Below are positions 674-47,614 of a stretch of DNA of 64,000 bases, one piece after another (the first letter of the stretch is position 1; every line of letters starts with the position of its first letter). The notes beneath the pieces were generated by a model that was given only the letters and a program-made list of their open reading frames with translations, was not told the DNA's origin and searched no databases. This DNA is from Schmidtea nova (taxonomy: Eukaryota), in assembly GCA_044892505.1 (NCBI GenBank), contig CM097882.1, positions 184,202,001-184,266,000 of the forward strand, given 5' to 3'. A program made the position numbers and the translations under genes.

Positions 674-3362
674 ATGGGTTCAGTGAAAATACAATTTTGT
701 ATTGACGTTGAGTTTGAAAAAGATGGAGAATTTCAATTCTTCATAATTTCAAATTCTGCGAGACCTATGAGTGATACATTTTTTGACGAGGGTATCACTC
801 TTTTAAATGAAAAAATAGCATTAATTAACGATAAAGGGAGTAATTGGGTTATTAACAAAGTTAATGAAATCCATTTCGTTGCTCAAATTAGTCGATTGAG
901 TGGGCATGGTCACATTGAAACCCCTCAATCTTTACAATTAAAATATTGTACGGTAAATGTAAGAAATTCTGACGACTTGTGTTTCATTTATAGCATTTTA
1001 GCTATTTTGAAATATGATGAGGTAGATGATAATAGAAATAGAGCAAATAATTATAATATTAATGATCTTGACTTTGACCGTTCTGATTTACCGATGAGAC
1101 TTTGTAATATTCCGAAATTTGAGGTTAGAAATCCCGGACTTGCTAATAATGTTTTATCTTATGATGAAGATGCTCTTCTTGATACCTTTGAAAACCCTGA
1201 AGTTTTTAAACACCCTTGTGTCGATATAATTCATAGGTCGAAAGTTGTTGGTGGTACTCCTATTAACTTGATTTTGTTGGAAAGTGATGATGCATATCAT
1301 TATATTGCAGTCACCGATCTTGATAGGCTTTTGAATTATCGCAATCACTATTTTTCAGATACTCGCATACAAAGTATATGGTGTCATCAATGCTTGAATG
1401 GATTTAGAAAACAGGAAGCATTCAATTGTCATCAACAGTTGTGTGCTAAAAATCAATTAGGCACAACTCTTTATACTCTGCTTAGAAATGCAAATTTACA
1501 ATTTAGTAATTGGGGCAAAACAATTACCCCACCTTTTGTTGTTTACGCCGACTTTGAGGCCATTTTACCTACTGATGATAAATATTTTCAAAGACATGTC
1601 CCAATATTTGCTGGTCTGTTACTTGTAAATAACTTTACTGGAGAAAAGATTTACAAGAGTTTCTTAGGACTTTATTGTGTTTCTAAGTTTCTTTCTGAAA
1701 TTAGTGATATTTCTGAAACTATGGTTTATCCCCTTTATAAAAATAATTGTAAGAAACCACTTTTTATGACAGCGGCTAATCAACGAGCATTTTTAATGGC
1801 GGCAATTTGTTATCTTTGTAAGAAAATTTTAGTACAACTAGTCAGAGACCATGATCACTACACTGGTGAATATTTGGGTGCTGCTTGTAATTCTTGTAAT
1901 CAAACTCGTCGTTTATACAAGTTTATACCCGTTATTTTTCATAATTTAAAGGGATATGACTTGCACCATATTCTTAAATATGGTTTGGCTATTTTTAAAA
2001 CTTAGAAAATTTCTTGTACAAAATTTCTCTTCCAACAACTAGCGAAAAATTCTTAACTTTATCTGCAAGAGTTGGTGATTTAACCATTAAATTCATCGAT
2101 TCTTGTCAGTTTGTTAATTCTAGTTTAAATGACGCTGTTAAGACTTTTACTTGTTTGCCTTGACTAGATGTGAATTCACCGGGACTATTGTAGATTGTAA
2201 GGGTATTTTTCCTTATAATTTTGCAACATCTTTAGAAATTCTTAACAAATCTTATGAGTTTCCACCAAAATGTGTGCTCCGGGTTCAAAAGTTGAGAAGT
2301 TAATGCTTACGCATTATCCAAAGTTCAACTATGTTGTTCATTGGAGGCTTCTCAAGCTTTTTGTTTCTTTGGGTGTTAAAATAACACGAGTTCATCGTGC
2401 TGTTCAGTACAATCAGAAACCCATTTTAAAAAATATATAGATACAAACACTGAACTTAGGGCAGCTTCTTCTACGGCTTTAGATAAAAACTATTACAAAC
2501 TCTTGAATAATAGTCTTTATCGAAAAACGGTTGAAACTCTTAAGAAACGACTCAATTTACGACTATGTAATTCATCATCAAAACTGGTTACATATACTTC
2601 AAAACCTACCTTTAGAAAAACCTATAGGATTGATGATGACCTAGTTTCTGTCTTTCTTAATAAGGACTCTGTGTGTTTAGATAGACCCAGCTACATTAGT
2701 CAAACTGTACTGGATTTATCTAAACTTAAAATGTATCAACTCCAGTATGAAGAATTACAAAAATATCGTAATGAATTCAACTGTGAGATTGGTATAGTCG
2801 CTGGTGATACAGATTCTTTCTTCTTGGAAGTTAAGAACTGTAACTTGGATATTCTTTTGTCTGCTATGGTTAGGGAAAGGTTATTAGATACTTTGAATTA
2901 TGACGCAAATCATACCCTGTATTCGAAAAACCTAGATTACGTCATGGTAAATTCAAAGACAAGAATAAAGGATTCAAGTATGATGAGTGGGTATTTTTTA
3001 GGCCAAAGTGTTACAGTCTTTTAGGTGATGAAGAGTGCATTAAGGCTAAGTGTATAACATTGAAGGATACTAAATTAAATCATCAGTCGTATCGGGATTG
3101 TTATAATAATAATTCAATAGTTTCTGTTGATCAGTCGAGAATAGTTAGTAAGAATCATCAACTCTTTACTAATAAATATTCTAAAATTGCCTTGATTAAT
3201 CTTGATGACAAAAGACTTTGGGTGGATAAAAATGAAAGTCTTACATATGGACATTATAAAGGATTTGGCTCGTTTATAAATGAATCAAAAGATCAGTTTG
3301 GTGTTCCAGTTCCTGATCCAGCTCTCAATTCAAATTATATATCCAATTCAGATTTGTATTGA
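674..3362 (+). pseudogene. Protein-primed family B DNA polymerase (Polinton/Maverick/adintovirus type), fragmented
   Basis: ORFs 674-2005, 2503-3024 and 3060-3362 carry PFVVYADFE (ExoI), a CxxC..VRDHDH..CxxC zinc/endoVII-like insert, FHNLKGYD (ExoII), KLLNNSLYRKT (motif B), GDTDS (motif C) and the C-terminal NLDDKR. KGIFPY is read near 2200. Stops and frameshifts lie between the ORFs. Confidence 0.88.
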
Positions 3363-3869
3363 ATAAAACTTTGTTAAAAAATAATTGGTTTCATAATATC
3401 TAGTTTTATATTTATTTAGTTGATTATGTTTAATTATTTTCAAAGTTTTTATGTATTGTAATGATTTCAAACGGTTTTATCGTTCAGGGTTTTCATTTTT
3501 TGTGTGTCAATATTTTTATTTAATGTAAAAATAATTGTTTCTGTTTACAAATATTAATAAATGTCATCTGCTTTTATAGTTCCCCTCTGCTGAATAGTTT
3601 ATAAAATTTTGGCTACTCTCACAATTCTCGCATTCATTTCATCCATTTTCAAAGTTCTCACATTCGATTTTCTAAAGATCATTTTACCAAAATTATATAA
3701 TATATCAAAAGTTATCAATTAAAAAACAACTACTCGAAATGTTAGTCAGTACATTAAAACAAAAATGTCTTTCGATTAAGTAAAGACATGTTATCGTGTG
3801 TGTTACGAGTAATAATTAATGTGTTGTATGTTTTGACGTTACCAACAGTAGTCACTGCGGTTACACAAT

Positions 3870-4275
3870 GATGTATTTACCTTAGCAACAGGTTCCAAGG
3901 AGACAATACTTTAATGTGTATGTGCCTACCCTAGTAAAAGGTTCCTCGGGGATTATATATTGATGTGTGTTTACCCTGACAACAGGTTCTTCGGGGATTA
4001 TATATTGATGTGTGTATTTTCCTTGGCATCATCTTCCCCGGGGACTATATATTGATGTGTATGTATGTGGGTTTACCCAGGCAACATGTTCCTCAGGGAA
4101 GTCACCTTAATGTGTGTATTTACGTTAGCAATAAGTTCCTCGAAGAAAATACATTGGTGTGTGTTTAGCCTAGCAACATCTTCACCGAAGATTATATATT
4201 GATGTGTGTGCTTACCTTAGCAACATTTCCCCCGGGGATTGTGTTGTTGTGTGTTTTTACCTTAGCAACCATTGC
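3870..4275. repeat. Degenerate tandem repeat, about 9 copies of a 45-55 bp unit
   Basis: Recurring TGTGTG..TTACCYTRGCAACA..TTCCYCGGGGA..ATATATTGA units seen directly. Confidence 0.8.
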
Positions 4276-5761
4276 AATGTGAAAAAAACTGTGCTCGAGT
4301 CCTCACTATCTCTTACTGTAACAGGATACAATTTGTAATTATTCATCGTTCATTGATTTATTTATTTATGTATTGTCTTTTGGCTCTTGTCTTTTGGCTC
4401 TTGACGTTTTCTCTTTATACATTTAATGCATTTTCAACTACTTTTACTACTTTCTTTATACGATATATCGTTATACAATATTTACAAGACATCTATCATT
4501 TATTACATTTATGTTTCATCGAACTCAAGATGCAATTCTCGCATTCCCTATGTGGTCCATTCGTTGTTTCGTGTGTATCTGCTTCTGGTACTATCGAATT
4601 TATTACTGGTGATACCTTCATCCAACCTTTATTTGAGTGCGGTTTATTTTCATCAAATGTTTCATTTTCGTTATTATTATCTGGCTCCTGGTTGTCGTGC
4701 TTTACTTTGACGATTCCCGGTGGTTGTATTCGAGAATTTCGTTTCCTGTTTTCTGTCATTTCATGAAGTAGGACTCTTCGTTTTTGATAATTTATCATAT
4801 AACTTACATTTTTGCCATCTTTGTTCTTTCGTATATCATCGTTTTTGTCACTTGCGGTTCCTTTTGAAATGTCGTCCTCAACATTTATTATTATAATTAT
4901 TTTGTCCTCGTCATCTTCAGAATATCTTTCTATTGAACCTATCTAATCCTAACCCTAACCCATTTCTCTTCTACTTTTCGTTGTTCCCATCTCCTTTTAA
5001 TTCCACCCAGGGGTTTGCCCATGTCATTAGTTAATATTGTTGGGTTATTGGGTTGTTGGTGAAATGGTAAAAGTTACCAATCAAATATCTGACTCCAAAG
5101 CGTCCCTTTATATGACCCACAGTATAACAATTTCAATGAAACAAACCTTTATTGATTTTTACAATGAATTACACGATTCAAAATATCATGATCAATTCAA
5201 TATCTCTTTTGACAAATATAAGAGCTTATTACGACACTTCGTGAAGAATAGCTCTATTGTATAACGTCTAGAAAACTACAACTACTAACCACTGATTTTG
5301 ATTAAATATTGGTAATTGATTTCGATTGTTTCCTCGCTTGACTTTATTCCTTGCTCAATATTCTTTAGTTTTTTAACTTTTCGTCTGCTTAGCTTCCTTT
5401 GCCGTTGCAACATAATTTTTTATTTCTGCAACTGATTTAATAAAAAAAATTTCTTTTCGTATATTAAATCTTTCCTTTCGCATTTCAAATTCGTTTCATA
5501 TTTTCCACGTCAATTTTTAATTTCACTCTTGTTCAGGTTTTAATCTTTTTCTTTATCAATTTAAAATTCTCCACTAAATCTTGTCTACCACAATTTTTCT
5601 CTTACCAATTTTTAATTTCCAATAAATTTCGTCTCCACTTCTGTCTGAAACTTATATATTCTTCCCTTTTTATAACTCATCAAATTTTATGGCACAAGAA
5701 AAAATTTTTTTTGCATTTTGATTCCCAGACATCTTGTGTTTTCTCCGAATTCCCGTTTTCT

Positions 5762-7733
5762 CGGTGTTTCTCAAACTTTCTGGTACTTTGGAACCCTATC
5801 AATTTTTTCGTTTTCGTGGAACTCCTTCGGAAATTTTTATTACCAGATGAGTATTATCCACTTATATTAAATTCTCCTTTTTGATATATTTGTCAATCAA
5901 AAAGGGGGTGAATTTATTTTAAGCATTTTAAAAAGAGAAAATTTCATATTAATAAACTTTCATTGTAAATTATTTGAAAAACTGCAAGAATGAAAATAAA
6001 AATAAAGTTTTACACCAAATTGTTTCTATTTAAGTAAAAGTAGCAAAGAAATATTTTATTAAAATTAAATATATATTTTTAAAGAATACATTTTTACTAA
6101 TGTAAAATTGTTTGTTTTCGAAATGTATAACAAAACACTATTTAAATTCTATTTAGCCATAAACACATAAAGGATTCACTAAATTTACATTTTTTCATTC
6201 GTTACCGTCTAATAAACCAAATAAACAATTTAGATGGCTTTTATAACTAAAACGTAATTCATTGGTTCAAATATATAATTTACCATTTAAATAAAGAAGT
6301 TATCTAAAAAGATCCCCGCTTCATGAATATGTCTAAACAATATAATAGATATCTAATTTTCGGTTAATATGTATGCATATATGTGCAATATTTTATTAAT
6401 GAGTCAAATTTTTAAAATTGTGTGCATGCTGTTGCGTAATTATGTACTTTTTATGTTTACTTTCGTGTCATTAGCATAACAAAGAAAATTATTTTATTTT
6501 ATAAGCGTTTTAAAATATTCATTCTATAATTCATTACCCGAGTACAAACGCTCAATAATTCGAATTTCTCAAATATTCGAAATGAATTTGAACGTCCCAA
6601 AAAATTCGAATTATCGGAGTTTTACTGTATAAGTATTTAATAAAAAAATAATAATCCAAAAAAACATTTAATTAAAAAAACATTAATTTATGTATCAATG
6701 GGAAGAATGAGCTTGCAATGATTTGCATAAATCTTCAATATTTGGTGGAAGATTTGTAAATGATAATCTTACAATCGATATCAAATTTAATCTATTCCGT
6801 TGTTTAGTGTTGTTTAGTGACTGTTGAAAATCCGCTCTCACATAAATAAGTGGAAGGAAATGGGATAATACTTTGAATCACTTAAAACCTTGTACTTGCC
6901 ATTAATTTGGATCCAAAACTTAGCAAGTGATGAATTTTCTTTTACATTTTTCAATGTCACTTCTGATGAGAGATGAGCTAATAAATCTTACTCAACTATA
7001 GATTGGATATTTCTTGTATTTGTGAAATTGAATGGATCCTAAACCCATAATTTATCTGTTATCGGGTCTTGGATTACTGGAAAATATTCTTCAAATTTGA
7101 TTGATAAATTTTTTAAATGATTAACTATAATTATAATTAATTTATTGGAATTGTAATATTGGTTTCTATTTTTAGCTTCAATTATTTGATCCGTTAAGCA
7201 GCTGAACATATCGAAGTGGTTGTTTTCAACTCTCTGAATCCATAATTTAATTTTTTTCTTTTGTCTTTCTATTTTATTATAACTATCAAGCATTGTTTTG
7301 TATGTTCCTTGTAGTGCTAAGTTCAGTTCGTTCAACAGTTGAAAAATATTTGCAAGATAACATATTTTCATGTTCCACTCTATGTCCTTGAAGGACTGAA
7401 CTAGATCACTATTTTTACTTGATAGAAAGGCATTTATTTCTTCTCTTAGTTCATAAATTCTTTTTAATATCCGACCCCTGGATAACCAGCGAACTTCCGC
7501 ATGTAATAATAATGTTTTATGAGATGATCCCATTTCTTCGCACAATCTTTCTGTCAACAAATGCTTTAAACTCTAAACTTTAAAGCTTAAATTTCGAGCG
7601 AATAGTAATTTAATAATTTATAGTAATTTAATAAAATAAAAGTATTTGTTTTTAACTCTAAACTAAACTAAGTTATTAGAAATTATAGATATATTTTTAC
7701 TTACCATAACTTGTATAACAAAACATTTTAGAA

Positions 7734-7819
<86 letters not shown>

Positions 7820-8266
7820 TAAAAATTAAAATTTTCAAATGAACACGTAAATTTTTTTACGACCTGAAAATAACAAATAAAATTAATGAATTACTTAAAA
7901 TTAATATAAAAATAGCGGTGTACAATTGTATATTAATTGCCCGTTGATATATCTTATCGCGACTTATGACTGTTTTTTTATAAAACGAGTAGTTACCAAA
8001 GTAAAAATAAATTTTCAATTTTCATTAAAGATTTTTTTACATATATGTAAAGTAGGCCATGAAAAGTTTACAAATTTTTTTTCTACATTTTTTAACAGAA
8101 ATTTTTAAAAAATCCACGGAATTTTTCTAATGTTTAAAAATTTATTGAAATTCTAACTGAAACTCTCAGAAAAGAAAATCTATGGTTTCTTACATAAAAA
8201 TTCTAATTCGATTGAAATTTCACGCACAGCCCTTGGGTTCCGAGGAACAAAGTTTGAGAAATACTG
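5762..8266 (-). mobile_element. hAT (Charlie/Buster, ZBED5/FAM200-like) deletion derivative
   Basis: Inverted ends CGGTGTTTCTCAAACTTT (5762) and CAGTATTTCTCAAACTTT (reverse, ending 8266). The transposase fragment 6695-7560 has [13 protein letters not shown] and ends RNRLN...QAHSSH*. The TSD does not match. Confidence 0.75.
7737..7815. repeat. (TA)n microsatellite
   Basis: Pure TA run. Confidence 0.97.
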
Positions 8267-8480
8267 CTTTAGATCACTTTTTCTAGGGGTTATGGGGTGA
8301 GCTAGAGGGCTCTTATCTAGTGGGCTACTAACTATCTACTTACATGCATGTTGTCTCGGATGAGTCAAAGCGTGGACGTACATATTGTCGGAGCAACTGG
8401 TGGGGGAAGTCGTTTAAAGGGTAGAAAAAAAGTAGCGAATTTCTAAACGCATTTTGCTTTTTAATTTTTTTGTGCAATTA

Positions 8481-9300
8481 CACCCGGTTTCAAGCATTAA
8501 AAATAACTATGATACAAGTAGGTGTGCACACCTACTTGTTACTCATAGTTATTTTGTTTAATGTTTTATTTATTCATTTAGACATCGTTTTTCAATTAGC
8601 CATTTTTTTAAAAATGGCTGTCAGGTAATCTTATTTATCTAGATATCTTTTAATGCTTCTATTTTGATCTTACAATGATATAAGATCACTATAGAAGCTT
8701 TGAAAGTTTATCTTTATTCTTCATTGTTAATTTGATTTTATGTTTATTAGCATTTTTAGAAAATTATGAATTTTTATGAATGTTTTTGGAAATATTTCAA
8801 TAAACGTAAGTAAAAGAAAATTTTTTAACAACAGTTTATTAATTAAATCCATCAGTCTCCGAATATTTCAATTTTCTTGCAACATTTGGGGAAGAACCTC
8901 CGAATATGCTCATAATAATTCTTTAAATTTTTGTAGTCGTCCTTATCCAGCTCGTTATCAATTGCTTCTTTGATCAATAAAAATCTGTCTTGAAATGACA
9001 TTGAGCCAAATCCATTTGCTCTAGATATTACTTTTCTTATGCTGAACTTAACTTTGCTGAAGACGCTTTCAATCGGATTTAAGAAAGGGCTATATGGGGG
9101 CAAATTCACAATGAAATTATTTGGAGATAAATCATAAATTACGAAGTTCTTACCATATTATGTCTTCACATTCACGAAATGGAAGAGTTTCTGTAGAAAT
9201 TTCGGAAATATCGGAAATCCTATGAAATATTGAATTAAATATAATTTTTTAAAAAATCTTACGACGTATTTTCTCTTTCTCGAAAACTAACAGTCGATTC
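8481..9300 (-). mobile_element. Tc1/IS630-like element remnant
   Basis: ORF 8852-9109 has [12 protein letters not shown]. It is homologous in DNA and protein to the element at 55465-56470 and has a similar left end (TA-CACCCGGTTTCA). The right boundary is uncertain. Confidence 0.75.
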
Positions 9301-9759: not shown

Positions 9760-12633
9760 TGAGTGCTAAAAATGCGAAAAAATTACGAATGAAAATCTGG
9801 ATTTCAAAGAACGATGGGAAATTGAAAATTATGTATGTTTGCTATATGTAAAGAATATAATTTGAAGCACCATTATCAATCACAGCATGAAAAAATTATT
9901 CGCAATACACTAGTGATGCAAGAAACGTCATAACTGAAAAAAAACAATTTAAGCAGCAAACATCACTTATCACCTTCACAAGTAAGGCTAAGGATGCATA
10001 TGTGTCTGCTTCTTATGCAGTTGCAGAAGAAATTGCCAAAGCCAAAAATCCTTTTACTGATGGTGAAATTATTAAGAAGTGTGCAGTCAAAAAGGCTCAA
10101 GCATTTGAAGAAGAGAAAATGGTAAAACAATTTAGAGTTAATTTCTCTGCCTCATCAAACCATTGCGAGACTCATATTTAATATGGCCAACTTTTTAGTT
10201 GAAAAGTTAGCGGAATATAGTAAAAAATTGTATCGATCTTTTCAATTGCTCTTGATAAAATCACTGACATATTCCATACCAGTCAAATTCTGATTTTTTA
10301 CGGACAGTAGATGCAGATTTTAATGTTTCGGAGGAGTTATTGAAATTGGCTTGCATAGATTGAACAAAAGGTGTAGATATTTATGAAGAACTCAAAATTG
10401 TTATGTGCGTGTATGGTGGTTTTGAAAAATGTACTGTCATTGTAATTAAGGGAGAAATACCAATGGTTGGCAAAATTATAGGCCTCACTGGACTGATAAA
10501 ACAAAATGAGATTAATTGTCAAAGGTTGCACTGCATTATTCACCAGCAAGCTTTATGCGGAAACATTGTTAGATTAAGTTGCACGAATGCACAAAGAAAT
10601 GGAAACCGTCGTAAATTTAAAGAATTTATAAAAGAATTTTATGCCGAATATGCTGACCTACTTTTGCATATCCAAGTTCACTGGTTAAGCGCAGGAAATT
10701 CCTTTAAATGTTTTTGTCAACTTCGTAAACAAAATAAACTTTTTCTTATAAACAGTATTGGATTCATCATTTTTCGCCAGTTTTATTAGAAAAACATTTT
10801 TAATTTTATTAGAATCTTTAGCAGATATTTCCGGATATTTGAATATGTTGAACAAAAACTTTCAAGGCAAAGACCAAAACATAAGTCATCTAATAAGCCA
10901 TATCATCGGATACCGCAATAAGATACGTTTGCTTCGGTCACATTTGATCTATAACAACTTGGTGCATTTCGAGTGTCGCTATGAACTTGATCTCAAAACA
11001 CAAGAAATCGGTCATCAATAAAACTTGAAAAATTTTGCACCGTTTTTGAACAAATTAATTGAAGATTTTGATGCCATATTTTCTGATTTTGACCTAAAGC
11101 CGATTTAAAATTATTTAATAATCAGACTGCCGTCGAAGTAGAAGAAACCGATATTAAATATCAAATGGAACTATGTGAATTGCAAGCAGGCGAATCTTTT
11201 AAATCAAGGCCGGAGACTGGTGTAAATTTATTCAAAATGTTTCAAGAAAAATATCCGATATTTCGCGATTTAGGCTTAAAATTAATTTCTATGTTTGATA
11301 TTACATATATTTGTAAATGAGCTTTTCCTGACATGAAATTTATCAAATCTAAATGTAGAAATTCAATGACCGACAAACCATTAGAAGAAATTTTGAAGAA
11401 ATCTTGGATCATCCCGATTTTTTGACCCATTTCGATATCATTCCGATTTTTTGACCCAGAAATTTATTTTATAAATAAATTATAACTTATATTATTGTTT
11501 TAAATAAAATCACAATATTATAAAATCAGAAAATATCTTTTAAACATTAATAACATAACAAATTAATAACTTAGAACTTTTTAATCAAATGTAATGTTTT
11601 TTCAAAACAATCATTTTTGTTATTATCCAACCACATAAACTCCACAAGAAAATCTTCTCGGCAATTTTCTTTTATACCCCGTATTTCTTTTATCTTTAAC
11701 TTTATTTTGTTATTGTAACTTTCGATGTTCTGGGTGTGAACTCCATTTTTATAATCCACGAATTTATATTTATAACAATTGATTTGTGTTCATAAGATGC
11801 CTTTTTATCTACTTGGCTATAGATTTTGGCCTCATCTGTATAGATAATTGAACCTTTTCTCACATATTTCTCTATAATTGGTATTATAGTTTCAGCTTTC
11901 TTATCAGGAACAAGGGACATATAGCCTTTCGCTGGTGAAAAAGAGCAATCAACAATACCCGATGCCCAAATTTTTTTTTTTGGGGCTCTTCCTCTGTGTG
12001 CCTTCACCTTGTGATTTAGCATGGTTTCGTCTAACTGCGCGAGCTTTCCTGGACCTCCTAACAGAAAAGGATGCGTTTCGTAATGGTTTTTTATTGCTGA
12101 AATAAGCAATCGTCTTAGCTTTCGTATTAAATCTTCTTTAATTTTCACAAACTTCAAAATTTCAGCACTTTGCAACCCTTTCGACCAATAAAATAGAAAT
12201 TTTAAAATTTCTTTGAGAGGTATCCTCATCTTCTCAAAAAAAACTATTTTCTCTAACCGAAACATTATAATCTCGTTTTCTACACTGAGATAATCGGCAT
12301 CTCCAACACATACCATCATAATTTCTTTTTATCTTTACTAGTATCATTTCTTTTTGGCAAGAAGAGCATTTTAATTCATTCGTTAACATGCCATTGTCTT
12401 TCATAAAATATATGAGTTCTTCTTCATTCATTGTAATTATTCTATCGATATCCATTTTAAGGGGATTAATTAATATGTATTTTGCCCTGTTAAAATTTCA
12501 ATAAATATCATTTTTATTTAATTTTTATCCAACCCGGTTTTTTGACCCGATGGGTCAAAAAACAGGTTGGTCCGAAATCTTTTCAACCAAAATTGATATT
12601 AATATCGAAGCTCTTGTAGCTGACCATAAATAA
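9760..12633 (+). pseudogene. hAT transposase (SPIN/GTF2IRD2-like), decayed and interrupted by a Merlin element
   Basis: KEYNLKHHY-type N-terminus, RLHCIIHQQALC, VHWLSAG, and a C-terminal dimerisation-like segment (FIKSKCRNSMTD). The sequence resumes after 12581. Confidence 0.75.
11406..12573 (-). mobile_element. Merlin (IS1595-like) DNA transposon, full length, frameshifted
   Basis: 8-bp TSD GAAATCTT at 11398-11405 and 12574-12581. TIRs are GGATCATCCCGATTTTTTGACCCA and GGACCAACCTGTTTTTTGACCCA. ORF pieces 12234-12455 (CxxC), 11702-12319 (QLDET, IYTDE) and 11571-11759 (HTQNIES). Confidence 0.92.
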
Positions 12634-33720: not shown

Positions 33721-36700
33721 TTATTTGAGGCAATCGCTATAGCGTTTTTTGTAAAGGGGTGTGATTATGGTGTCCTTGTCGAACAGTTTTATTGAGTTTT
33801 TGGAGTTGAATGTGATGTGTTTGTGTTTTGTTTGAGTTTTTATTTCTGCCGGGGCTTTTTCTTTTGTTGGGTTGTTTGGGGTGTTTTGGTTGTTGTGGTA
33901 TGGCTTAATTCTTCTCAGATTGATTCTTATTTTGGTGTTATCTTTTATTATTGTTGCGACATTTTTATTAATTTCGAGCAATCTGAAAGGGCCTTCGTAT
34001 TTTGGTTCGAAACCTTTGGTGAAGGGCTTTTTTACTAATACGTAGTCTGTTGTCAGCACTACTTTTCCATCCATTTCAGAGTTAGCTCTTTTTTTAAGGA
34101 TTCCTTTTAATTTTTTTCCAGTTTTTTCGTTGTTTGTGTTGGTTTCCGCGTTTTCGGTTGTATTGTTTTTGATTGTTGGGAGATTTGCTTCTCTGCCGAA
34201 TACTTTGTATGCTGGGCTTTCGTTGTCAGTTGAGTTTGGCGTGTTTCTTAGCCCCAGTAAGATTGTCGGGAGTTGACTTAGCCAATTTCTGTCGTCTGCT
34301 TTGGTTCGGATACTTTCCTTTAGTGTTCTGTGCAATCTCTCGATTTTTCCATTTGCTTGAGGGTTGTAAGCTGTTGTGCGGTTTCTTTTGATGTTGTATT
34401 TGTTGCACAGAGTACTGAACAATTCTGATTCGAACTGTCTCCCTTGGTCTGTTATCAATACTTTTGGTTGACCGTAGCGAGCTATCCAATTTAGTTCGAG
34501 CTTGTTGCATATGTTCTGGGCTGATGTTTCCTTTAGCGGGATGATTTCGAACCAGTTAGTCTTCCTGTCGATGATTGTGAGTAGGTAGTTGTACCCGTTG
34601 TTTGGTGGTAACGGTCCTACTATGTCGATGTGAATCATCTCGAAAGGTTGACTGCTTGGAAAGTTTACTTTTTGTGTTGTTGGTTTCTTTGATATTTTGT
34701 TGATTTGGCAATCTTTGCATGTTTTTACGAAACTTTTGATTTCCTTTCTCATATTTGGCCATATGTATCTGTTGTGAATTATTTCGAAAGTGGCTTTGTT
34801 ACCTGGATGGCTGATGTCATGAATTTTCGAAATACACGATTTCCTAAACTCTTTTGGTAAGAGTATTCTTGGTGGGTTTTCGTTGCTGACGTCGTATCAA
34901 ACTTCATTGATTTTTTCTAATTTCAGGCTGTGTTTTAGCGGAAGTTCTTTTAAAGTTTCTGGTTGTTTGTTTTTAATTTTTTCGATTTCGAATAGTTCGC
35001 CAAATTCTAGTGCGTTTATGTCTGTTTCTATTCTTGACAGAGTGTCTGCTGCTATGTTTGCGGCGCCAGCGACATAGTTGATTGTGCAATTAAATTGTGA
35101 TATGTAATTTAATTGTCTTATTTGTCGTGGCGATGGGTTTTTCATTTGTATCGCGTTTGTTAACGGTTTGTGGTCCGTATATATTTTGAAATTTCTTGCT
35201 TCCAGTAAGTGTTGGAAGTGTTTGATGGCTTCATGTATCGCGAGTAGTTCTCGATCAAAAGTTGAGTATCGTGTTTGATGTATCTTTAGTTTTTTTGAGA
35301 AAAACCCGATTGGCTGTTTGCCGTATTCATTCTCTTGGTATAAGGTTGCGCCCATTGCATATCCAGAGCAGTCTGTTGCTAAGTTGTAGTCAAGTTCTGG
35401 ATTTGGATATCCGAGTAATGTTGCTCGGGATAAGCTTGTTTTTGCTTTTTCGAACTGTTTGGTAGTTTGTTCGGTCCAGTTTATTTTAATGTTTCTTCTT
35501 GTCTTGATCAGGTCGTTTAATGGAGCTAACAATTCACTACAGTTAGGGATGTACGCATGGTAAAAGTTTACCATCCCTAAGAATCGTCTTAGCTCTCTGT
35601 TTGTGTTCGGTAATCTGAACTCTTGTATCGTGCTTATTTTCTTGTCTATTGGTTTCGTGCCTTTTTCGTCCAGAGTGTGTCCCAGAAAATTAATCTCTTT
35701 TTTCAAAAATTCGCATTTTTGAATGTTTATTTTGAGATTTGCGGAGTTCAGCGTTTCAAACACCTTTTCGATGTCTTTTAAGTGAGTAGTTTTGTTTGGG
35801 CTTGCTATGAGGATGTCGTCCAAATATGCTATTGTGTTCTGGTTGTTTTTCAGCGTTTTGTCCATAAATCGTTGAAATGTTGCAGCTGCGTTTCGCAAAC
35901 CAAATGGCATTCTGTTGTACTCGAACATGCCGATTGGTGTTACGATTGGTGTTTTTTTTATATCCTCGTTCCTGATGGGTATTTGGTGGTAAGCCTTCTG
36001 TAAATCAATTTTCGAGAAGAGTTTGGCTCCTTTTAATCTGTTTATTATATCTCTGATGATAGGCAGTGGATAGTTGTCTGGTTCCGTGATTTTGTTGAGC
36101 ATTCGGTAGTCTCCACAAGCTCTCCATTCTCCGTTTGCCTTTTGTTTGAGCATGAGTGTTGAGGACCAATCAGAGTTCGAGTGAGTTACTATTTTGTTTT
36201 CTAGTAACTCCTTGAAAATTTCGTTCGTAATTTTTGTTTTTTGTGGATCTAGTTGTCTCACCTTTGCATGCACCGGGTTTCCGTTTGTTATGATTGCATG
36301 TTCGGTGGAGTGATCCGCGTTTTTGTCGAAAGTTACTGGTTCGGTGAGTTTTTCGAATTTTTCCAGTAGTTTATTTATTTCTGGGTCGTGATTCAGTTTT
36401 TGTTTTTGTCTATTGTTAGGTGTATCCGTTTGGATCACACCGATGTCTATTTTTGGCTTTCCTCCATTGTTTGTGGTGTGCTGTGGTGTTGTAGTATTAG
36501 TATTATTTTCTATTATTTGTTTGTTTTTACAATCCACTAGGAGGTTGTAATTTGTTAGGAAGTCTGCTCCTATTATCGCTTGTTGGACCTCAGCTATTGT
36601 GAATGTCCAGTTGTAAATTTTTTTGTTTATGTTTATATTTATTTTTTGTTGCCCGAAGGTTTTGATGTTTGTGCCGTTAGCTGCTGTTAATGGTTTTTCT

Positions 36701-36789
36701 GTTTTGTTGGCACTTTTATACATAGAATGGGGCAGTAGTGAGATCACCGAGCCGGTGTCTATTAAAAATTCTATGTTGTTGCTGTGCAC
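33721..36789 (-). pseudogene. pol (PR-RT-RH-IN) of element 2 with one in-frame TGA at 34897-34899
   Basis: LIDTGS, CGDYRMLN, YLDDIL, TDCS, HDISHPG..CKDC, HIDIVGP, TDQGRQFES, GPF. The reading frame continues past the TGA. Confidence 0.9.
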
Positions 36790-36839
36790 CCAAAATGTGT
36801 TGTTTTTGTCACCTGATGTGGGTGCTATAATTGGTGACT

Positions 36840-37970
36840 TTATTGGTTTCCCTGCTCTGTTTTATTGAATTCGCAGGGTTGTGTGCATTTGAATGCTTTT
36901 TCACCAAATTTGTTGTGGAAATAGCAAAGGTTTTTGTTTAGGTAATTGTTTCTTGGGTCTCTTTCTGGGCTTCTGTTTCGGTAATTGTTGCCTCGATTAG
37001 GGGAGTTTGACCGGTTTCTGTAATTGTTGTTCGGTGATTGACTGCGGCTGTAGTTTTGTCTGTTTTGACCGTCTGATGGCAGGTCTCTGTTGTAGTTATA
37101 TCTGTTGTAATTGTCGTATGATTGTGTTGAGTTGAAAGTCTGTTTATTACAACGTTCTTTTATTTCGGCTAATTCTGTTTTAATTTGTCTGTTTTCGACT
37201 ATGATTTCGTCGAATTTGCCAATTAGGGTGTTTAATAATTTGTTCATGTTGTCGTTTGTTTCGTTGTTTTTGTTGTATGCGGGATTATTGTAGTGCGGTT
37301 TGTTTTTGTTGTTGTTTTGGGTGCTGAATATAGTCGGATAGATTTCCTCGTTGATCTTATCCGCTATGTCGGCAAGCGTTTCCACGTCAGCGTTGTTGCT
37401 GGCTGCCAAAATCCTCCTGATTTCTGGTGGCATTGCTCGCATGAAAAATTCTTTGACCAGTTCGTTGGAGCCTGAATTTGTGATATTGGGTTGGAGGTAT
37501 TCTAATTTTTGCTTAAGTTGTCGGAGAAAATCTGTTGGTTTATTGTCGCCTAGTTGCGTGTTATTGAGGCATGACTCTAGCATTTGTCTCCTATTTATTT
37601 TGTTTTTATTCGTAAGGATGTTACACAGTTTGTTAAAGGGGTCCTCATCCTTAGAAATTTCTTCGATCTGATCCGCTATTTCATTTAGTTTGTTGCTGGG
37701 GAGTGCGGCTATAATGTTTGAGCATAGGGTTTTTGTGGATTTTATTCCTGACAATGTTAATGTTAATTTAGCAAATTCCAGCCATTTTTGTGGAGTGCCA
37801 TTTTCATCGGTGAAGTAGTTTGGTAGGTTGGGTTTCGGGTTGATTACAGAGTTTATGGTGTGTGTGTTTTCGGGGTTGTAATAGTAGTTGTTGTTTTGGT
37901 GTTGGGATTGTGCATTTTCGTTATCAATGGGTGTTTGTGAAATGTTTGGGTTTGCTTGGTTCGATGCCAT
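36840..37970 (-). CDS. Gag of element 2, 376 aa
   Basis: Open ORF upstream of pol with a C-terminal CHCC box. Confidence 0.9.
   Translation of the reverse strand: MASNQANPNISQTPIDNENAQSQHQNNNYYYNPENTHTINSVINPKPNLPNYFTDENGTPQKWLEFAKLTLTLSGIKSTKTLCSNIIAALPSNKLNEIADQIEEISKDEDPFNKLCNILTNKNKINRRQMLESCLNNTQLGDNKPTDFLRQLKQKLEYLQPNITNSGSNELVKEFFMRAMPPEIRRILAASNNADVETLADIADKINEEIYPTIFSTQNNNKNKPHYNNPAYNKNNETNDNMNKLLNTLIGKFDEIIVENRQIKTELAEIKERCNKQTFNSTQSYDNYNRYNYNRDLPSDGQNRQNYSRSQSPNNNYRNRSNSPNRGNNYRNRSPERDPRNNYLNKNLCYFHNKFGEKAFKCTQPCEFNKTEQGNQ
36846..36852 (-). promoter_or_regulatory. -1 ribosomal frameshift slippery site GGGAAAC
   Basis: G GGA AAC in the gag frame, two codons before the stop. The -1 frame is open into the protease (GKPIKSP...LIDTG). 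Confidence 0.8.
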
Positions 37971-42828: not shown

Positions 42829-43464
42829 TAATCAAATTTATTATTATAAAAAAATTATTTTTGTATTATTTTATATTAAATATTCTTAAATAATGTTTCA
42901 ACTATTAATATGAAAATATTATTATGTATTTTTTATTATTGGAATAATACTTTAAAAACATTTATTTCGTTTGTGTAACTAAAAAATACCTTTTAACTAA
43001 AAAGTTACCTTTTAAATTTTGGAATCTAAAAAATTTAAATATTTAAAAAAACTTGCGAACAACTGATTAAATTTCTAAAACAATAAAATATAAATTAATT
43101 TTTTATAATAAAAATATTTTCAACTTACGATTTTGAAAATTTGAAAAGTAATTGTTCTATCAATTGTGTTTTGTTTAAAACATGATTTCTTTGACCTGAT
43201 TGTACTCGTTTGGTTATTTTCATATACGTTTGTTAATATTTTTCAAAAGATATTTCACGTGATTGAAATAATAAATAATACTAAGGCAGTCGGGCGTGCT
43301 TGCAAACAGGTTCTGTTGAAAACTTTTAGTGCAGAGGCGAATATGATTTTCATACGCCATGTTTGCAAGTTACAGATTATCCATAAAATACCTAGAATTT
43401 TCAAGTGATGTGATATCCGGGGTACCAAGAACAATATTTAACAAAGTTGTTTCGGCTTTGTTTT

Positions 43465-43570
43465 ATACTTACCTGGCGCAAAGTGCAATTTTCGCGTCTC
43501 CTGCATAGCACTGATGAGAGCCAAAAGCGCGAAACTAGTCTGTTATTAGGGTTTTGCACTGGGTATCACA
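43465..43570 (+). ncRNA. U1-headed type I hammerhead ribozyme, diverged copy A
   Basis: ATACTTACCTGGCGCA...ATAGCA CTGATGA GAGC CAAAA GCGC GAAAC TA GTC TGTTAT, with one stem II mismatch. Upstream sequence 43240-43464 is homologous to the 382-bp unit. Confidence 0.75.
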
Positions 43571-45046
43571 AAGCTTTACACTTTATTATAATTATTATTA
43601 TTTAGATATTTTTATTAAAATAAATTATATTAAAAAAATTTAATATTAGTAAAATATAATTATGTTATATTAATTATTTGAATATAGGTTTTAAACAGAA
43701 TTATTAAGGAACATTTCTAATTATTTTAGTTGATATGGAGTTTTCTCATATATTTAAGTATACTTCTTGCCCGATCTCTACATAATATGTCCACGCTCAG
43801 TTCCAAATTAATTGGATTTAGTTTTTGCCTAACAATTTTAACCATAGTATTTTATTTAGAAATTTGATGAAGAATAATGATACGATAGTTGGTACAGGTG
43901 TGGGGGTTTGTGGAGATTGTGTAATTGTTTATTTTATGAAGTTATTAAAGAATTTGCTATTCGTGTGTTGATTGCTGAAATGGATTGTGCTTATTGCTAA
44001 TGCTAAGTTCCAGAACATGGAAAGTATATTAATAAATACTTGAAATAATATTTTTTTATTTTCGATAATCTGCTATGCACATGGAAATTTTAAAGTAATT
44101 AAAAAAATTGTGCTAAATTTATCATTTATAAATTGTCAACTTGATGATTATTTCGAATCAAACAACTTATAGTTATTAAATTTTATCAAGTGTGTAGCGG
44201 GCTCACATCTATCTACTTTTGACATAACATATGACCTTGTCATTTCCCCAGTCTCAGGCTGTTACACTTTCTTAGAACCCCGGGACGTGATTTATTTTAT
44301 AAAAGTCCATTTTGGTTTTGAAAAATCTTTATTTCTTCAAGCATGTTTTAAAATAAAATTTATATAATTTATAACTACAAAACATACAAAAGTTGTTTAT
44401 TAGTCTTTAAGTATCTTATTATAACAAAAATAAACTATCCCAACTTATAAATAAACTGCTCAAATAATAGTTTGTTTAGTGTCTTAAATATATTTATTTC
44501 TTATTATTTATAAAGTAGTTTTATTATTATGCTTCTAATTAAATAATTATCGAATTTCAGCCTGATTATATCGAACTTATCAATCAAAGCACTAAGTATA
44601 ATAACCCAAAAGGTGCTGCTATTGTTTTCGAATTCAAAAATTAAGCTTTAAATTTTAGGTTATGAAACTCATTTTAAAATCATTATCGTATCCAATAAAT
44701 TTATCAAACGATCTCTCTCTGAAGTTTGTATTTTTTGAATTTAATGTTTTAATTTCTATTATTGATAATATCACTTATAATTATCGATATATTTACGTCG
44801 ATTAGTTACTTATAAATATATATAACTACTCTCAAATTGCAAATAAGTAATAATAATCTCAATACAATTTACCCTTTATAAACACATGTAAAATAAAATG
44901 CAAAATTAAATTAATGTTGAGGTTCCGAGAATCTCAACTTGATGGTTCGTATATAAATAAAAACACAGTCTGTTTACTAACTTTTATTTATATATTACAA
45001 TATTTTACAAGCTGATAAAAATTACCTTTTGATTAAATGAAATTTT

Positions 45047-45389: not shown

Positions 45390-45940
45390 CTAATTTTATT
45401 AAAGGTTTTAAATCTAGTTTAATTCAGCCTCTAATAATCTAGGGTCACGGCACAACACAAAAAGATTTCTGTCCGTATGCCCATAAATATCATGTGTACT
45501 TACGTTGGTAATACATACGTCAGGCGACTGAATCACCAGGTGAGCATCTGTATTAATACTACTCCCGAATCTACCATTCTCGCGGGTTTTGTCTTATGTT
45601 AATAAAAAACAAATGGGTGTAATAAGGTTTGATTTCTACGGTTAAAATAAATTTTGTTATTAAAAACCGGAATTTAGCGAGGGAACAGTGACAAAGGGTG
45701 AGAAAGAGAAAGATAAAGTGACCTTCTATCGGTCGTAAGGAACCCACGAGAATGGTAGAATCGGGAGTAGTTTTTGTCAAGAAGCTCATCTGCCGATTCA
45801 CATTCGCTTGTCATGTGCATTACCAACGTAAATAAATAGGGTATTTACGGGCACATGGACAGTAATCATTTTATGTGCTGTGAAGTAACCCTAGAAAATC
45901 ATAGGTTAATTAAAATCAGATTACAATTTTTATAAAATAA
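45390..45940. mobile_element. Foldback/MITE-like element with long imperfect inverted repeats
   Basis: About 200-bp arms. The innermost 32 bp (ACTACTCCCGAATCTACCATTCTCGCGGGTT) is near perfect; the outer parts are diverged. Confidence 0.7.
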
Positions 45941-46560
45941 ACCCGTTCAACAAACACTATCATGAAAAATATAGAAATTTTAGACAGATAAAAGTAAAAT
46001 TTGGGATATTGTCCTTCGTGTCTTAAAGGATTTCATTATGTTAAACATTAGCATCTAAATTTTTTTTAGAGAAATCGAATGGTCCATGAAGCATTACGAG
46101 AAGAATTTCTTGGTGAATTAAAGGCTATAACTTTAACGGTATATCTAAATATAAAGTTTAATAATATCTTTCTGTTTAGACAAAAACAATTAAAGAGTGG
46201 GAAGAGAATATATAATTGTACTACATTTATATTGTATTAATTTCATTAAAATGTAATTTCCGTGTTTTGTTTTTAATATTAGATTTTAATAATAATAATC
46301 TCGGTACTTCTATACTTTCCCCCCACCTTTGATTATTATTAATATTAATATTATTATTAATAATATTATTATTATAATTATTATTGTTATTATTATTATT
46401 GTTATTATTATTATTATTAATATTATTATTATTATTAATATTTATATTATTAATAATATTATTATTATAATTATGTTTTATCCAGTGTACCAGGTATAGT
46501 ATATAACAAAATCTTTCGACTTTGTTTTATACTTATCTGGCGCGGAGAGAAATTTTCGCG

Positions 46561-46616
46561 TCTCCTGCATAGCACTGATGAGAGCCAAAAGCTCGAAACT
46601 AGTCTGCTATTGGGGA
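46561..46616 (+). ncRNA. Type I hammerhead ribozyme, copy B (predicted cleavage after 46604)
   Basis: Intact CTGATGA and GAAA core, 4-bp stem II with a CAAAA loop, GTC triplet. Stem I is ATAGCA/TGCTAT, extended by TCTCC/GGGGA across a bulge. Confidence 0.9.
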
Positions 46617-46942
46617 TTTGCACTGGGTATCACAAAAAAAATCACAAGCTTTTTTTTGTTTAAAACAAAGAAGTCATCCGACAAATGTTTTTTTCAAAAG
46701 ATATTTCAAGAAATTGAAATAATGAAGCTAAGGCAGTCGGGTGCGCTTGCAAACAGTTTCTGTTGAACACTTTTAGTGCGCAGAGGTGAAAATGAAATTC
46801 ATACGCCATGTTTGCAAGTTACAGATTATCTGTAGGACCTTGCATATTCAAGTGATGTTTTATCCAGTGTACCAGGTATAGTATATAACAAAATCTTTCG
46901 ACTTTTTTTTATACTTACCTGGCGCGGAGAGAAATTTTCGCG

Positions 46943-46998
46943 TCTCCTGCATAGCACTGATGAGAGCCAAAAGCTCGAAACTAGTCTGCTATTGGGGA
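46943..46998 (+). ncRNA. Type I hammerhead ribozyme, copy C (predicted cleavage after 46986)
   Basis: Identical to copy B. Preceded by a perfect ATACTTACCTGG at 46911. Confidence 0.9.
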
Positions 46999-47614
46999 TT
47001 TGCACTGGGTATCACAAAAAAAATCANNNNNNNNNNNNNNNNNNNNNNNNNNNNNNNNNNNNNNNNNNNNNNNNNNNNNNNNNNNNNNNNNNNNNNNNNN
47101 NNNNNNNNNNNNNNNNNNNNNNNNNNNNNNNNNNNNNNNNNNNNNNNNNNNNNNNNNNNNNNNNNNNNNNNNNNNNNNNNNNNNNNNNNNNNNNNNNNNN
47201 NNNNNNNNNNNNNNNNNNNNNNNNNNNNNNNNNNNNNNNNNNNNNNNNNNNNNNNNNNNNNNNNNNNNNNNNAGGTGGGGGGAAGTATAGAAGTACCATA
47301 ATCTCAATATCAAACACAATTAATGTGCCCAGATATATTCATATTGCCAATTTCAGTTGATCTTTGTGATTAAATTAGATTTTGATTCACGGATAAAAAT
47401 CGCTTTACCATTGATTACTTATTTAAGACTCTAAAAATAAAAATATCTGATGAACGTAAGTAGGCACGCATGCGGAAATTTCCTTAGACCAAATCGGTTT
47501 CTATGCTGATTTTTGATACTTTAAAACAGTGTTGCACAAATACTAGGTTCCAACCACTTGGAATTTTGCTGGAAAATTATTGAGGATCACCGAAATTTCA
47601 AGTGATTTATATTA

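What the first reader, a model, noticed from the sequence alone, without database searches (positions are those of the whole stretch)
46474..47026. U1 snRNA-headed hammerhead ribozyme in a 382-bp tandem repeat
Seen: each unit has ATACTTA(C/T)CTGGCGCG, then a CGCGGAGA-GAAA-TTTTCGCG hairpin, then a complete type I hammerhead, then ATTTGCAC. Established: ATACTTACCTGG is the U1 5' end that pairs with splice donors, AUUGCAC is the U1A loop, and animal retrozymes are short tandem units punctuated by type I hammerheads. Inference: self-cleavage would release 382-nt monomers that could circularise, or a 76-nt RNA from the U1-like start carrying an intact splice-site-recognition end but no clear Sm site. 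I know of no described U1-hammerhead fusion.
Basis: partly seen in the sequence, partly recalled or inferred. Interest (0 to 1): 0.9.

Follow-up and report, generated by a model that had tools for sequence, protein, structure and literature searches.

The report
Hammerhead retrozyme carrying a U1 fragment
This is one insertion of a very abundant 382-base mobile repeat that encodes a self-cleaving hammerhead RNA (an animal "retrozyme"); it carries the first 19 bases of U1 splicing RNA but nothing else of U1, and those bases are predicted to be locked in a hairpin, so it is a curiosity on a known kind of element, not a new U1-ribozyme system.

Summary
Units lie 382 bp apart and are 98.8% identical over the 172 nt they share. 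Each has a complete type I hammerhead, with cuts predicted after 46604 and 46986. It is preceded by a GAAA-capped hairpin and by ATACTTA(C/T)CTGGC. A third, decayed copy lies at about 43169-43579.

It is a metazoan non-LTR retrozyme. The unit has low GC and no ORF, and helix III is a palindromic minimal stem, so cleavage is expected in dimers. Thousands of contigs in public runs of the same organism carry the family.

The U1 match is real but short. The 19-mer ATACTTACCTGGCGCGGAG equals the start of genuine U1 genes recovered from metagenomes. Rfam U1 finds nothing in the stretch, and a purpose-built model of U1 nt 1-95 scores only 15-19 bits, all from nt 1-17. There is no Sm site, no AUUGCAC loop and no U1-70K loop. 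In the 382-nt monomer the 13-mer is fully paired with a splice-donor-like arm.

The locus is a 5'-truncated partial tandem sitting in an (ATT)n tract, inside a 25/26-nt TIR plus 8-bp TSD element, and it runs into an assembly gap. Expression and cleavage were not testable. This scan had already found the same family at other sites of this genome.

The parts
46474..46604 (+). 5'-truncated first unit (unit positions about 251-382), abutting the (ATT)n tract; ends at the first predicted hammerhead cut
   Evidence: BLAST of the unit against the window: 46473-46604 = unit 251-382 at 98.5%; sequence
46605..46986 (+). One complete 382-nt unit, from cleavage site to cleavage site. GC 36.9%, longest ATG ORF in a dimer 62 aa.
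   Evidence: The fold gives -115.9 kcal/mol, z -5.5 against shuffles
46987..47026 (+). Start of a third unit, cut off by the assembly gap 47027-47272
   Evidence: 100% identical to unit 1-40; gap listed
46569..46610 (+). Type I hammerhead, copy 1. Helix I AUAGCA/UGCUAU, helix II GAGC/GCUC with loop CAAAA, helix III A-U closing the palindromic CUAG. Cut after C46604. Distal helix I UCUCC (46561-46565) / GGGGA (46612-46616).
   Evidence: RF00163 27.6 bits, E 1.9e-4, model 1-45; sequence
46951..46992 (+). Type I hammerhead, copy 2; cut after C46986
   Evidence: RF00163 27.6 bits
46529..46547 (+). U1-derived 19-mer, copy 1 (ATACTTATCTGGCGCGGAG). The T at 46536 is private to this copy.
   Evidence: At 46536 nearly all family depth reads C: 157004 of 158214 in X1
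46911..46929 (+). U1-derived 19-mer, copy 2 (ATACTTACCTGGCGCGGAG). Identical to nt 1-19 of genuine U1 genes. Its first 12 bases (46911-46922) belong to the 3' arm of hairpin A (46909-46922).
46872..46885 (+). 5' arm of hairpin A (CCAGGUAUAGUAUA), a splice-donor-like sequence that pairs with the U1-like arm. Copy 1 is at 46490-46503.
   Evidence: Folds
46923..46942 (+). Hairpin B: 8-bp stem CGCGGAGA/UUUUCGCG with a GAAA tetraloop. Copy 1 is at 46541-46560.
   Evidence: Sequence; folds
46852..46870 (+). 5' strand of the closing helix (GUGAU..AUCCAGUGU). It pairs with GCACUGGGUAUCAC at 47002-47015 (copy 1 at 46620-46633) and encloses hairpin A, hairpin B and the hammerhead in one junction.
Evidence: Folds.
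43169..43579 (+). Solitary, decayed copy of the same family. 84.5% identical over 43239-43540. Keeps ATACTTACCTGGC and the hammerhead core. Helix II has an A-G mismatch and hairpins A and B are broken.
   Evidence: fold z 0.24
46332..46474 (.). (ATT)n microsatellite in which the truncated array starts
   Evidence: TRF: period 3, 47.7 copies
46303..46328 (+). Left terminal inverted repeat GGTACTTCTATACTTTCCCCCCACCT, preceded by the 8-bp duplication ATAATCTC (46295-46302)
47273..47297 (-). Right terminal inverted repeat (25 of 26 positions, one base missing), followed by ATAATCTC (47298-47305)

Best explanation
The stretch is one insertion of a high-copy, non-coding, non-autonomous retroelement of the metazoan non-LTR retrozyme kind.

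**How it most likely works (inferred from the family).** Multimeric + strand transcripts fold so that two neighbouring hammerheads pair through their palindromic ACUAGU helix III and cut after GUC. This releases 382-nt monomers with 5'-OH and 2',3'-cyclic phosphate ends. Helix I and a 14-bp closing helix hold those ends together, so a tRNA ligase of the RtcB type can circularise the RNA. Copies return to DNA through the reverse transcriptase of Penelope-like elements. That gives 5'-truncated partial tandems, solitary copies and inverted copies, often in microsatellites.

**This locus.** Here such a partial tandem landed in the (ATT)n tract of a small TIR/TSD DNA transposon.

**The U1 head.** It is a 19-nt fragment of U1 snRNA (nt 1-19). 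It was most likely captured once at the RNA level, either by template switching to the 5' end of U1 or by read-through from a U1 gene. It is now kept as the 3' arm of a structural hairpin next to the ribozyme. It is not a working U1.

**Shown here:** the anatomy, the family's abundance, the extent of the U1 identity and the predicted pairing. **Inferred:** cleavage, circularisation, the Penelope partner and the capture route.
For: - **Hammerhead.** Intact core and full-length RF00163 alignment in both units.
- **Architecture.** Helix I has 6 bp plus a bulge plus 5 bp, helix II has 4 bp, and helix III is a single A-U closing the palindromic CUAG. PMC4209133 and PMC7229834 describe this as the canonical metazoan type I hammerhead that works as a dimer.
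- **Unit.** 382 bp, 36.9% GC, no ORF. PMC7229834 gives tandem units of about 170-400 nt with GC under 45-50%.
- **Family.** 2998 and 7975 contigs of two runs of one organism lie on the stretch. There are tandem, solitary, deleted and opposite-strand joints. A diverged solitary copy lies 3 kb away.
- **Structure.** The monomer folds far better than shuffles, z -5.5.
- **U1 fragment.** 19 of 19 bases equal the start of loci that Rfam scores as U1 at 136-167 bits. Only 21 different 8-mers occupy U1 nt 12-19 in that panel.
- **Family consensus.** It keeps the exact 13-mer (46536 T>C in over 97% of depth). In subfamily forms the partner arm varies while the U1-like arm stays the same.
- **Pairing.** The 13-mer is paired in the monomer, unpaired probability 0-0.14.
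- **Insertion context.** Truncated start in (ATT)n. PMC8557442 reports microsatellite bias, 5' truncation, partial tandems and adjacent inverted copies for Penelope-like elements. A 2026 preprint derives animal retrozymes from Penelope pLTRs.
Against: - The hammerhead score is below Rfam's gathering threshold (27.6 against 34).
- No RNA run is on record for the holders, and all runs were contigs, so transcription, cleavage ends and circles are unseen.
- No Penelope-like reverse transcriptase was found among window ORFs of 150 aa or more. Its presence in this genome rests on unchecked notes of the scan.
- The host's own U1 gene was not available to me. The 19-nt identity is to U1 genes of unknown environmental eukaryotes.
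- Only 1.45 units are visible, and the right junction is hidden in the gap.
- The conservation of the 13-mer in the solitary copy is not significant on its own (0.845^13 is about 0.11).
Confidence: 0.75

Rival explanations
1. A working U1-headed small RNA. Some copies are transcribed from the ATAC as +1. The hammerhead trims the 3' end and gives a 76-nt RNA whose free U1 5' end binds splice donors in trans, as a decoy or competitor of U1.
For: Folded alone, the hypothetical 76-mer has nt 1-10 free (unpaired probability at least 0.95), followed directly by a 10-bp hairpin. This layout is like the start of U1. The U1-like arm is invariant across subfamilies while its partner varies.
Against: Nothing marks a promoter or a start at that base. 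There is no Sm site, no U1-70K or U1A loop and no 3' box, so snRNP assembly and stability are not expected. In any longer transcript the 13-mer is fully paired. The window's first copy carries a T in the donor-pairing stretch.
Confidence: 0.06
2. The U1 likeness is only the mirror image of a splice donor. The functional element would be the donor-like CAG|GUAUAGU on the + strand, or the perfect CAG|GTAAGTAT on the - strand. The pairing arm then looks like U1 by necessity. This would echo the intron that ends at helix I of the Drosophila virilis Penelope hammerhead.
For: Hairpin A pairs a donor-like arm with the 13-mer. The - strand reads CCAGGTAAGTAT. PMC4209133 reports an intron abutting the hammerhead in D. 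virilis Penelope. A pyrimidine-rich tract followed by UAG lies just before CACUGAUGA, about 78 nt downstream of the + strand GU.
Against: The identity to U1 continues 8 nt (GCGCGGAG) past the part that can pair with a donor. In abundant subfamily forms the + strand arm reads CCAGGAACAG or CAGGAAAAG, without GU, while the U1-like arm is unchanged.
Confidence: 0.1
3. Chance: a structural hairpin arm that happens to spell the U1 5' end.
For: Across a scan of many gigabases exact 13-mers arise by chance, and family amplification then multiplies the sightings. Three hits in the window are matched by 3 of 100 shuffles. All three belong to one family, so they count as one event.
Against: A 19-nt identity that starts exactly at U1 nt 1 is very unlikely within one 382-nt consensus. 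Given the 11-nt donor-pairing part, the next 8 nt match one of only 21 panel variants out of 65536 possible 8-mers.
Confidence: 0.07

Closest known systems
Metazoan non-LTR retrozymes (Cervera and de la Pena 2020, PMC7229834), including newt satellite 2 and the schistosome Sm-alpha repeats
   Same: Non-coding AT-rich units of a few hundred bp in tandem, with one type I hammerhead per unit. Helix I of 6 bp with a bulge, helix II of 4 bp, and a minimal palindromic helix III that calls for dimers. High copy number, with solitary and tandem copies.
   Different: This family carries a 19-nt U1 snRNA 5' fragment in a hairpin beside the ribozyme. None of the papers I found mentions this. RNA circles are not shown for this family.
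Penelope-like elements and their pLTR hammerheads (PMC4209133, PMC8557442, preprint 10.64898/2026.07.22.740005)
   Same: Hammerhead-bearing repeats; 5'-truncated partial tandems; inverted neighbours; insertion into microsatellites.
   Different: There is no RT or GIY-YIG ORF here. The hammerhead is the canonical form with loops, not the minimal PLE form.
SINEU, SINEs with U1- or U2-derived heads (Kojima 2015, PMC4494074)
   Same: A retroposon that has taken up U1 snRNA sequence beginning at the snRNA's 5' end. Copies are often found inside a DNA transposon family.
   Different: In SINEU the snRNA-derived sequence forms the element's 5' head. Here only 19 nt are present, they are internal to the linear solitary copy, and the element is a ribozyme repeat without a LINE-type tail.
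U1 snRNA (RF00003)
   Same: Nt 1-19 are identical to some genuine U1 genes.
   Different: No four-way junction, no stem-loops I-IV, no U1-70K or U1A loops, no Sm site. No Rfam hit at E<=10.

Membership tests
Hammerhead ribozyme type I (RF00163) | Conserved core CUGANGA ... GAAA ... NUH cut site in the type I order | tested here: met
   CUGAUGA, GAAA and GUC are aligned to the model over positions 1-45 in both units
Hammerhead ribozyme type I (RF00163) | Helices I and II base-paired, with loops placed for tertiary contact | tested here: met
   Helix I is 6 bp, then a UGC/U bulge, then 5 bp. Helix II is 4 bp with loop CAAAA. The tertiary contact itself is inferred.
Hammerhead ribozyme type I (RF00163) | Score at or above Rfam's gathering threshold | tested here: not met
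   27.6 bits against 34. The loss comes from the minimal helix III, which is the usual metazoan form (PMC4209133).
Hammerhead ribozyme type I (RF00163) | Self-cleavage | not testable with these tools
   Needs in vitro transcription of a monomer and a dimer
Metazoan non-LTR retrozyme | Short tandem units (about 170-400 bp), low GC, non-coding, one type I hammerhead each | tested here: met
   Spacing 382; GC 36.9% and longest ORF 62 aa; one hammerhead per unit. Only 1.45 units are visible before the gap.
Metazoan non-LTR retrozyme | Multi-copy family in the genome | tested here: met
   2998 and 7975 contigs laid in two runs; a solitary copy in the window
Metazoan non-LTR retrozyme | Expressed as linear and circular monomer RNAs | not testable with these tools
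   No holder is on record as RNA, and all runs were contigs
Metazoan non-LTR retrozyme | Penelope-like elements present in the same genome | not tested
   None among window ORFs of 150 aa or more. Only unchecked notes of the scan say so.
U1 snRNA (RF00003) | 5' end AUACUUACCUG | tested here: met
   Exact at 46911 and 43465, one mismatch at 46529
U1 snRNA (RF00003) | Stem-loops I-IV and overall covariance-model match | tested here: not met
   No U1 hit at E<=10. Model R1 of U1 nt 1-95 gives 15.4-18.7 bits, from nt 1-17 only, and aligns the rest differently in different copies.
U1 snRNA (RF00003) | U1A loop AUUGCAC and U1-70K loop | tested here: not met
   No ATTGCAC and no GATCA in the unit. 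ATTTGCAC lies in a predicted helix.
U1 snRNA (RF00003) | Sm site RAU3-6GR | tested here: not met
   The regex finds none in the unit
SINEU-type snRNA-headed SINE | snRNA-derived head at the 5' end of the element, joined to a LINE-derived tail | tested here: not met
   The 19-mer lies about 300 nt inside the solitary copy, and no LINE-like tail is seen
TIR DNA transposon (non-autonomous; 8-bp TSD as in Merlin or hAT) | Terminal inverted repeats flanked by a direct target duplication | tested here: met
   25/26-nt TIRs at 46303-46328 and 47273-47297. ATAATCTC lies on both sides. The superfamily is not decided, because the element has no transposase inside.

The most novel reading that the evidence does not exclude
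The retrozyme family arose by insertion into, or read-through from, a U1 snRNA gene. Some copies may still use a U1-type start. Their transcripts would begin with a capped, free U1 5' end and be trimmed by the hammerhead to a 76-nt RNA that competes with U1 for splice donors. That would make it a selfish element tampering with splice-site recognition or with U1-dependent suppression of premature polyadenylation.
Probability: 0.05. Interest if true: 0.85.

Novelty: new variant of a known kind. Interest (0 to 1): 0.33.

Why it matters
Retrozymes are a recently recognised source of abundant small circular RNAs in animals, and their origin and transcription are still unclear. A family that carries an exact U1 snRNA 5' fragment gives a datable mark of contact between a ribozyme retroelement and a host snRNA. 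That contact could have been template switching by the mobilising reverse transcriptase, or transcription from a snRNA gene, which would parallel the SINEU elements of crocodilians. If the fragment turned out to be exposed in any RNA species, it would link a selfish circular RNA to splice-site recognition. As it stands, the locus is an ordinary retrozyme insertion with an unusual passenger. This scan has already reported the same family at other places in this genome.

Tried and rejected
- **Whole-window Rfam scan at gathering thresholds:** blank.
- **Tandem Repeats Finder:** missed the array, because fewer than two units are visible.
- **First hammerhead pattern:** I miscounted the helix II spacer, so it found nothing.
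- **U1-head-plus-hammerhead pattern:** no hit in JGI metagenome contigs or in IMG/VR. The arrangement was not found outside this organism's own data.
- **U1 identity beyond nt 17-19:** tested with Rfam and with my own model, and rejected.
- **'U1A loop' and Sm site:** rejected.
- **tRNA-like Pol III head, as in SINE-type hammerhead repeats:** ARAGORN found none.
- **Penelope partner in the window:** not found. The ORFs are gypsy-type RT/RNase H/integrase, a Merlin-type DDE fragment and others.
- **Covariation analysis:** not possible. The window has two near-identical copies and one decayed copy, and the runs gave summaries, not sequences.
- **Thermodynamic dimer test:** uninformative, -36.8 against 2 x -17.0 kcal/mol, and the nearest-neighbour fold mispairs the catalytic core.
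- **Organism name:** coded in the run table, and I did not pursue it.

Full report
**Observation**

A direct repeat joins 46463-46644 and 46845-47026 at a spacing of 382 bp. Over the 172 nt of true homology the two copies differ at two positions, 46524 G/T and 46536 T/C. The array starts inside a unit, at 46473/46474, which is unit position 251. It runs into the assembly gap at 47027-47272, so only about 1.45 units can be seen. That is why Tandem Repeats Finder reported only the neighbouring (ATT)n tract at 46332-46474.

**The ribozyme**

With permissive thresholds, Rfam's Hammerhead_1 model aligns over its full length to 46569-46610 and 46951-46992 on the + strand. The score is 27.6 bits and E is 1.9e-4 for that stretch. 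This is below the gathering score of 34, which explains the blank whole-window scan.

- All core boxes are present: CUGAUGA, GAAA and GUC.
- Helix I is AUAGCA/UGCUAU. After a UGC/U bulge it is extended by UCUCC/GGGGA.
- Helix II is GAGC/GCUC with loop CAAAA.
- Helix III is only an A-U pair around the palindromic CUAG.

PMC4209133 describes this as the canonical metazoan type I hammerhead: helix I of 6 bp, helix II of 4 bp, and helix III of 1-2 bp with a small palindromic loop. Such a motif is unstable as a monomer and active as a dimer in tandem transcripts. PMC7229834 says the same of the amphibian motifs.

**The unit and the family**

The unit is 382 nt, has 36.9% GC and has no ORF longer than 62 aa. 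As RNA it folds much better than shuffled controls (-115.9 kcal/mol, z -5.5).

About 165 nt of the unit form one compact junction. A closing helix (GUGAU..AUCCAGUGU at 46852-46870 with GCACUGGGUAUCAC at 47002-47015) encloses hairpin A, hairpin B and the hammerhead.

A third copy lies 3 kb upstream, at about 43169-43579. It is 84.5% identical, and it stands alone rather than in tandem. Its hammerhead core is intact, but helix II has a mismatch. Hairpins A and B are broken, and its fold is no better than chance (z 0.24). It is a decayed copy.

I laid the contigs of four public runs on the stretch.

- 2998 and 7975 contigs of two runs of one (coded) organism lie on it, with very high summed depth.
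- A soil metagenome holds a 385-nt contig with three differences.
- A run labelled as another organism holds a near-identical 233-nt contig.
- Many copies leave the tandem form at 46636 and continue GCTTTACC.., as the window's solitary copy does.
- There are deleted forms and opposite-strand joints.

All of this fits the definition of metazoan non-LTR retrozymes in PMC7229834: tandem units of a few hundred bp, low GC, one type I hammerhead each, from dimers to large multimers.

**How much U1 is there?**

ATACTTACCTGGC is exact at 46911 and in the solitary copy at 43465, and has one mismatch at 46529. The family consensus at 46536 is C. In run X1, 157004 of 158214 depth units read C, so the T is private to this copy.

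To judge the extent of the match from sequences given by a tool, I fetched metagenome loci that carry ATACTTACCTGGCG ... ATTGCAC. The seven loci I checked are U1 genes by Rfam, at 136-167 bits. Nine of the 123 matches begin with ATACTTACCTGGCGCGGAG, the same 19 bases as the retrozyme.

The donor-pairing part of U1 is nt 1-11. The identity therefore continues 8 nt into U1-specific sequence. In my panel only 21 different 8-mers occupy nt 12-19, out of 65536 possible. This argues that the piece derives from U1 itself. It argues against a mere complement of a splice donor, and against chance.

Beyond nt 17-19 nothing is U1-like.

- Rfam U1 gives no hit at E<=10 in the 831-nt stretch.
- A covariance model that I built from U1 nt 1-95 of 22 of these genes scores the three window copies at 15.4-18.7 bits. 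Only nt 1-17 match, and the rest aligns differently from copy to copy.
- The unit has no Sm site, no AUUGCAC and no GAUCA loop.

An earlier follow-up of this scan (s1-399578) states that the host's own U1 shares the first 17-19 bases. I could not check the host gene.

**Is the U1 end free?**

In the 382-nt monomer the 13-mer is the 3' arm of hairpin A. It pairs with CCAGGUAUAGUAUA (46872-46885), which is a splice-donor-like sequence. Its unpaired probability is 0-0.14.

I rebuilt subfamily forms from the loose-end consensus letters. These are approximate, with agreement of 0.64-0.70. They keep the hairpin, but the partner arm changes to CCAGGAACAGUAU or CAGGAAAAGUAU, which loses the GU. The U1-like arm stays the same. 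This speaks against a functional + strand donor. It hints at sequence constraint on the U1-like arm, but it is not a covariation test.

A hypothetical 76-nt RNA from the ATAC to the cut site would have nt 1-10 free, followed by a 10-bp hairpin. It would need a transcription start at exactly that base, and nothing here supports one.

**The locus**

The array lies inside a small DNA-transposon-like element.

- The terminal inverted repeat GGTACTTCTATACTT(T)CCCCCCACCT is at 46303-46328, and its reverse complement is at 47273-47297, matching at 25 of 26 positions.
- Each repeat is flanked by ATAATCTC, at 46295-46302 and 47298-47305.
- Another reader of this scan flagged the same frame (s1-429263).
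- Inside, the order is TIR, (ATT)n, the truncated retrozyme array, the gap, and the other TIR.

PMC8557442 reports that Penelope-like elements insert preferentially into microsatellites, are often 5'-truncated, form partial tandems and have inverted neighbours. A 2026 preprint derives animal retrozymes from Penelope pLTRs. The simplest reading is that a retrozyme partial tandem inserted into the (ATT)n tract of a resident TIR element. I could not test whether other copies of that element carry the array.

No Penelope-like RT is among the window's ORFs of 150 aa or more. Those ORFs are gypsy RT/RNase H/integrase, a Merlin-type DDE fragment and others. Penelope-like elements elsewhere in this genome are known to me only from unchecked notes.

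**Mechanism and rivals**

Best explanation (0.75): a retrozyme insertion whose RNA would be cut by dimeric hammerheads, circularised by a tRNA ligase and copied back by a Penelope-type RT. The U1 19-mer would be a captured passenger, held in a structural hairpin.

Rivals:
- a working U1-headed 76-nt RNA (0.06);
- a splice-donor element whose mirror image looks like U1 (0.10);
- chance (0.07).

Cleavage, circles, expression and the partner RT are all inferred. No holder of the sequence is on record as RNA, and only contigs were available.

**Known or new**

Three literature searches found no paper that links a hammerhead repeat with U1 sequence. The U1-head-plus-hammerhead pattern is absent from JGI metagenome contigs and from IMG/VR.

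The nearest precedent for snRNA sequence on a retroposon is SINEU (PMC4494074). It differs in having a long 5' head and a LINE partner.

The element is a new variant of a known kind. This scan had already found the same family on other DNA of this genome (s1-399578, s1-388934, s1-403482). My tests agree with those follow-ups.

Noticed in passing
window 46295-47305: The whole array sits in a TIR element: 25/26-nt inverted ends and the 8-bp duplication ATAATCTC. Its interior is almost only (ATT)n plus retrozyme plus an assembly gap. It could be a carrier of the array or merely its landing site.
   Followed up: partly
window 11702-12319 (-): A 205-aa ORF matches the ISXO2-like/IS1595 DDE transposase domain (PF12762, E 1.7e-9), the type found in Merlin transposons. 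Its ends are not related to the TIRs at 46303/47273 (no further match to the TIR in the window).
   Followed up: no
window 33721-37970 (-): A second LTR-retrotransposon-like block, apart from the large gypsy element at 13.5-30 kb: ORFs with integrase (rve), RVT_1 plus RNase H, and a weak DUF7041 match.
   Followed up: no
window 674-2005 (+): A 443-aa ORF with a borderline Endonuclease_7 (PF02945) match at residues 378-411 (23.7 bits, cut-off 23.6).
   Followed up: no
window 45455-45876: A long imperfect palindrome: arms 45455-45588 and 45741-45876, 78-82% complementary, about 150 nt between them. It looks like a fold-back or MITE-like repeat 0.6 kb upstream of the array.
   Followed up: no
L100 (metagenome contig), 925-9257: One environmental eukaryote has U1, U2 and U5 snRNA genes linked directly to its rDNA unit (SSU, 5.8S, LSU). 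L009 and L063 show U1-U2-U4-U5-5S clusters.
   Followed up: no
runs X5 and X6: A soil metagenome holds a 385-nt contig with 3 differences, and a run labelled as another organism holds a 233-nt contig with 1 difference. The host or a very close relative is therefore present in soil samples or as a contaminant.
   Followed up: no
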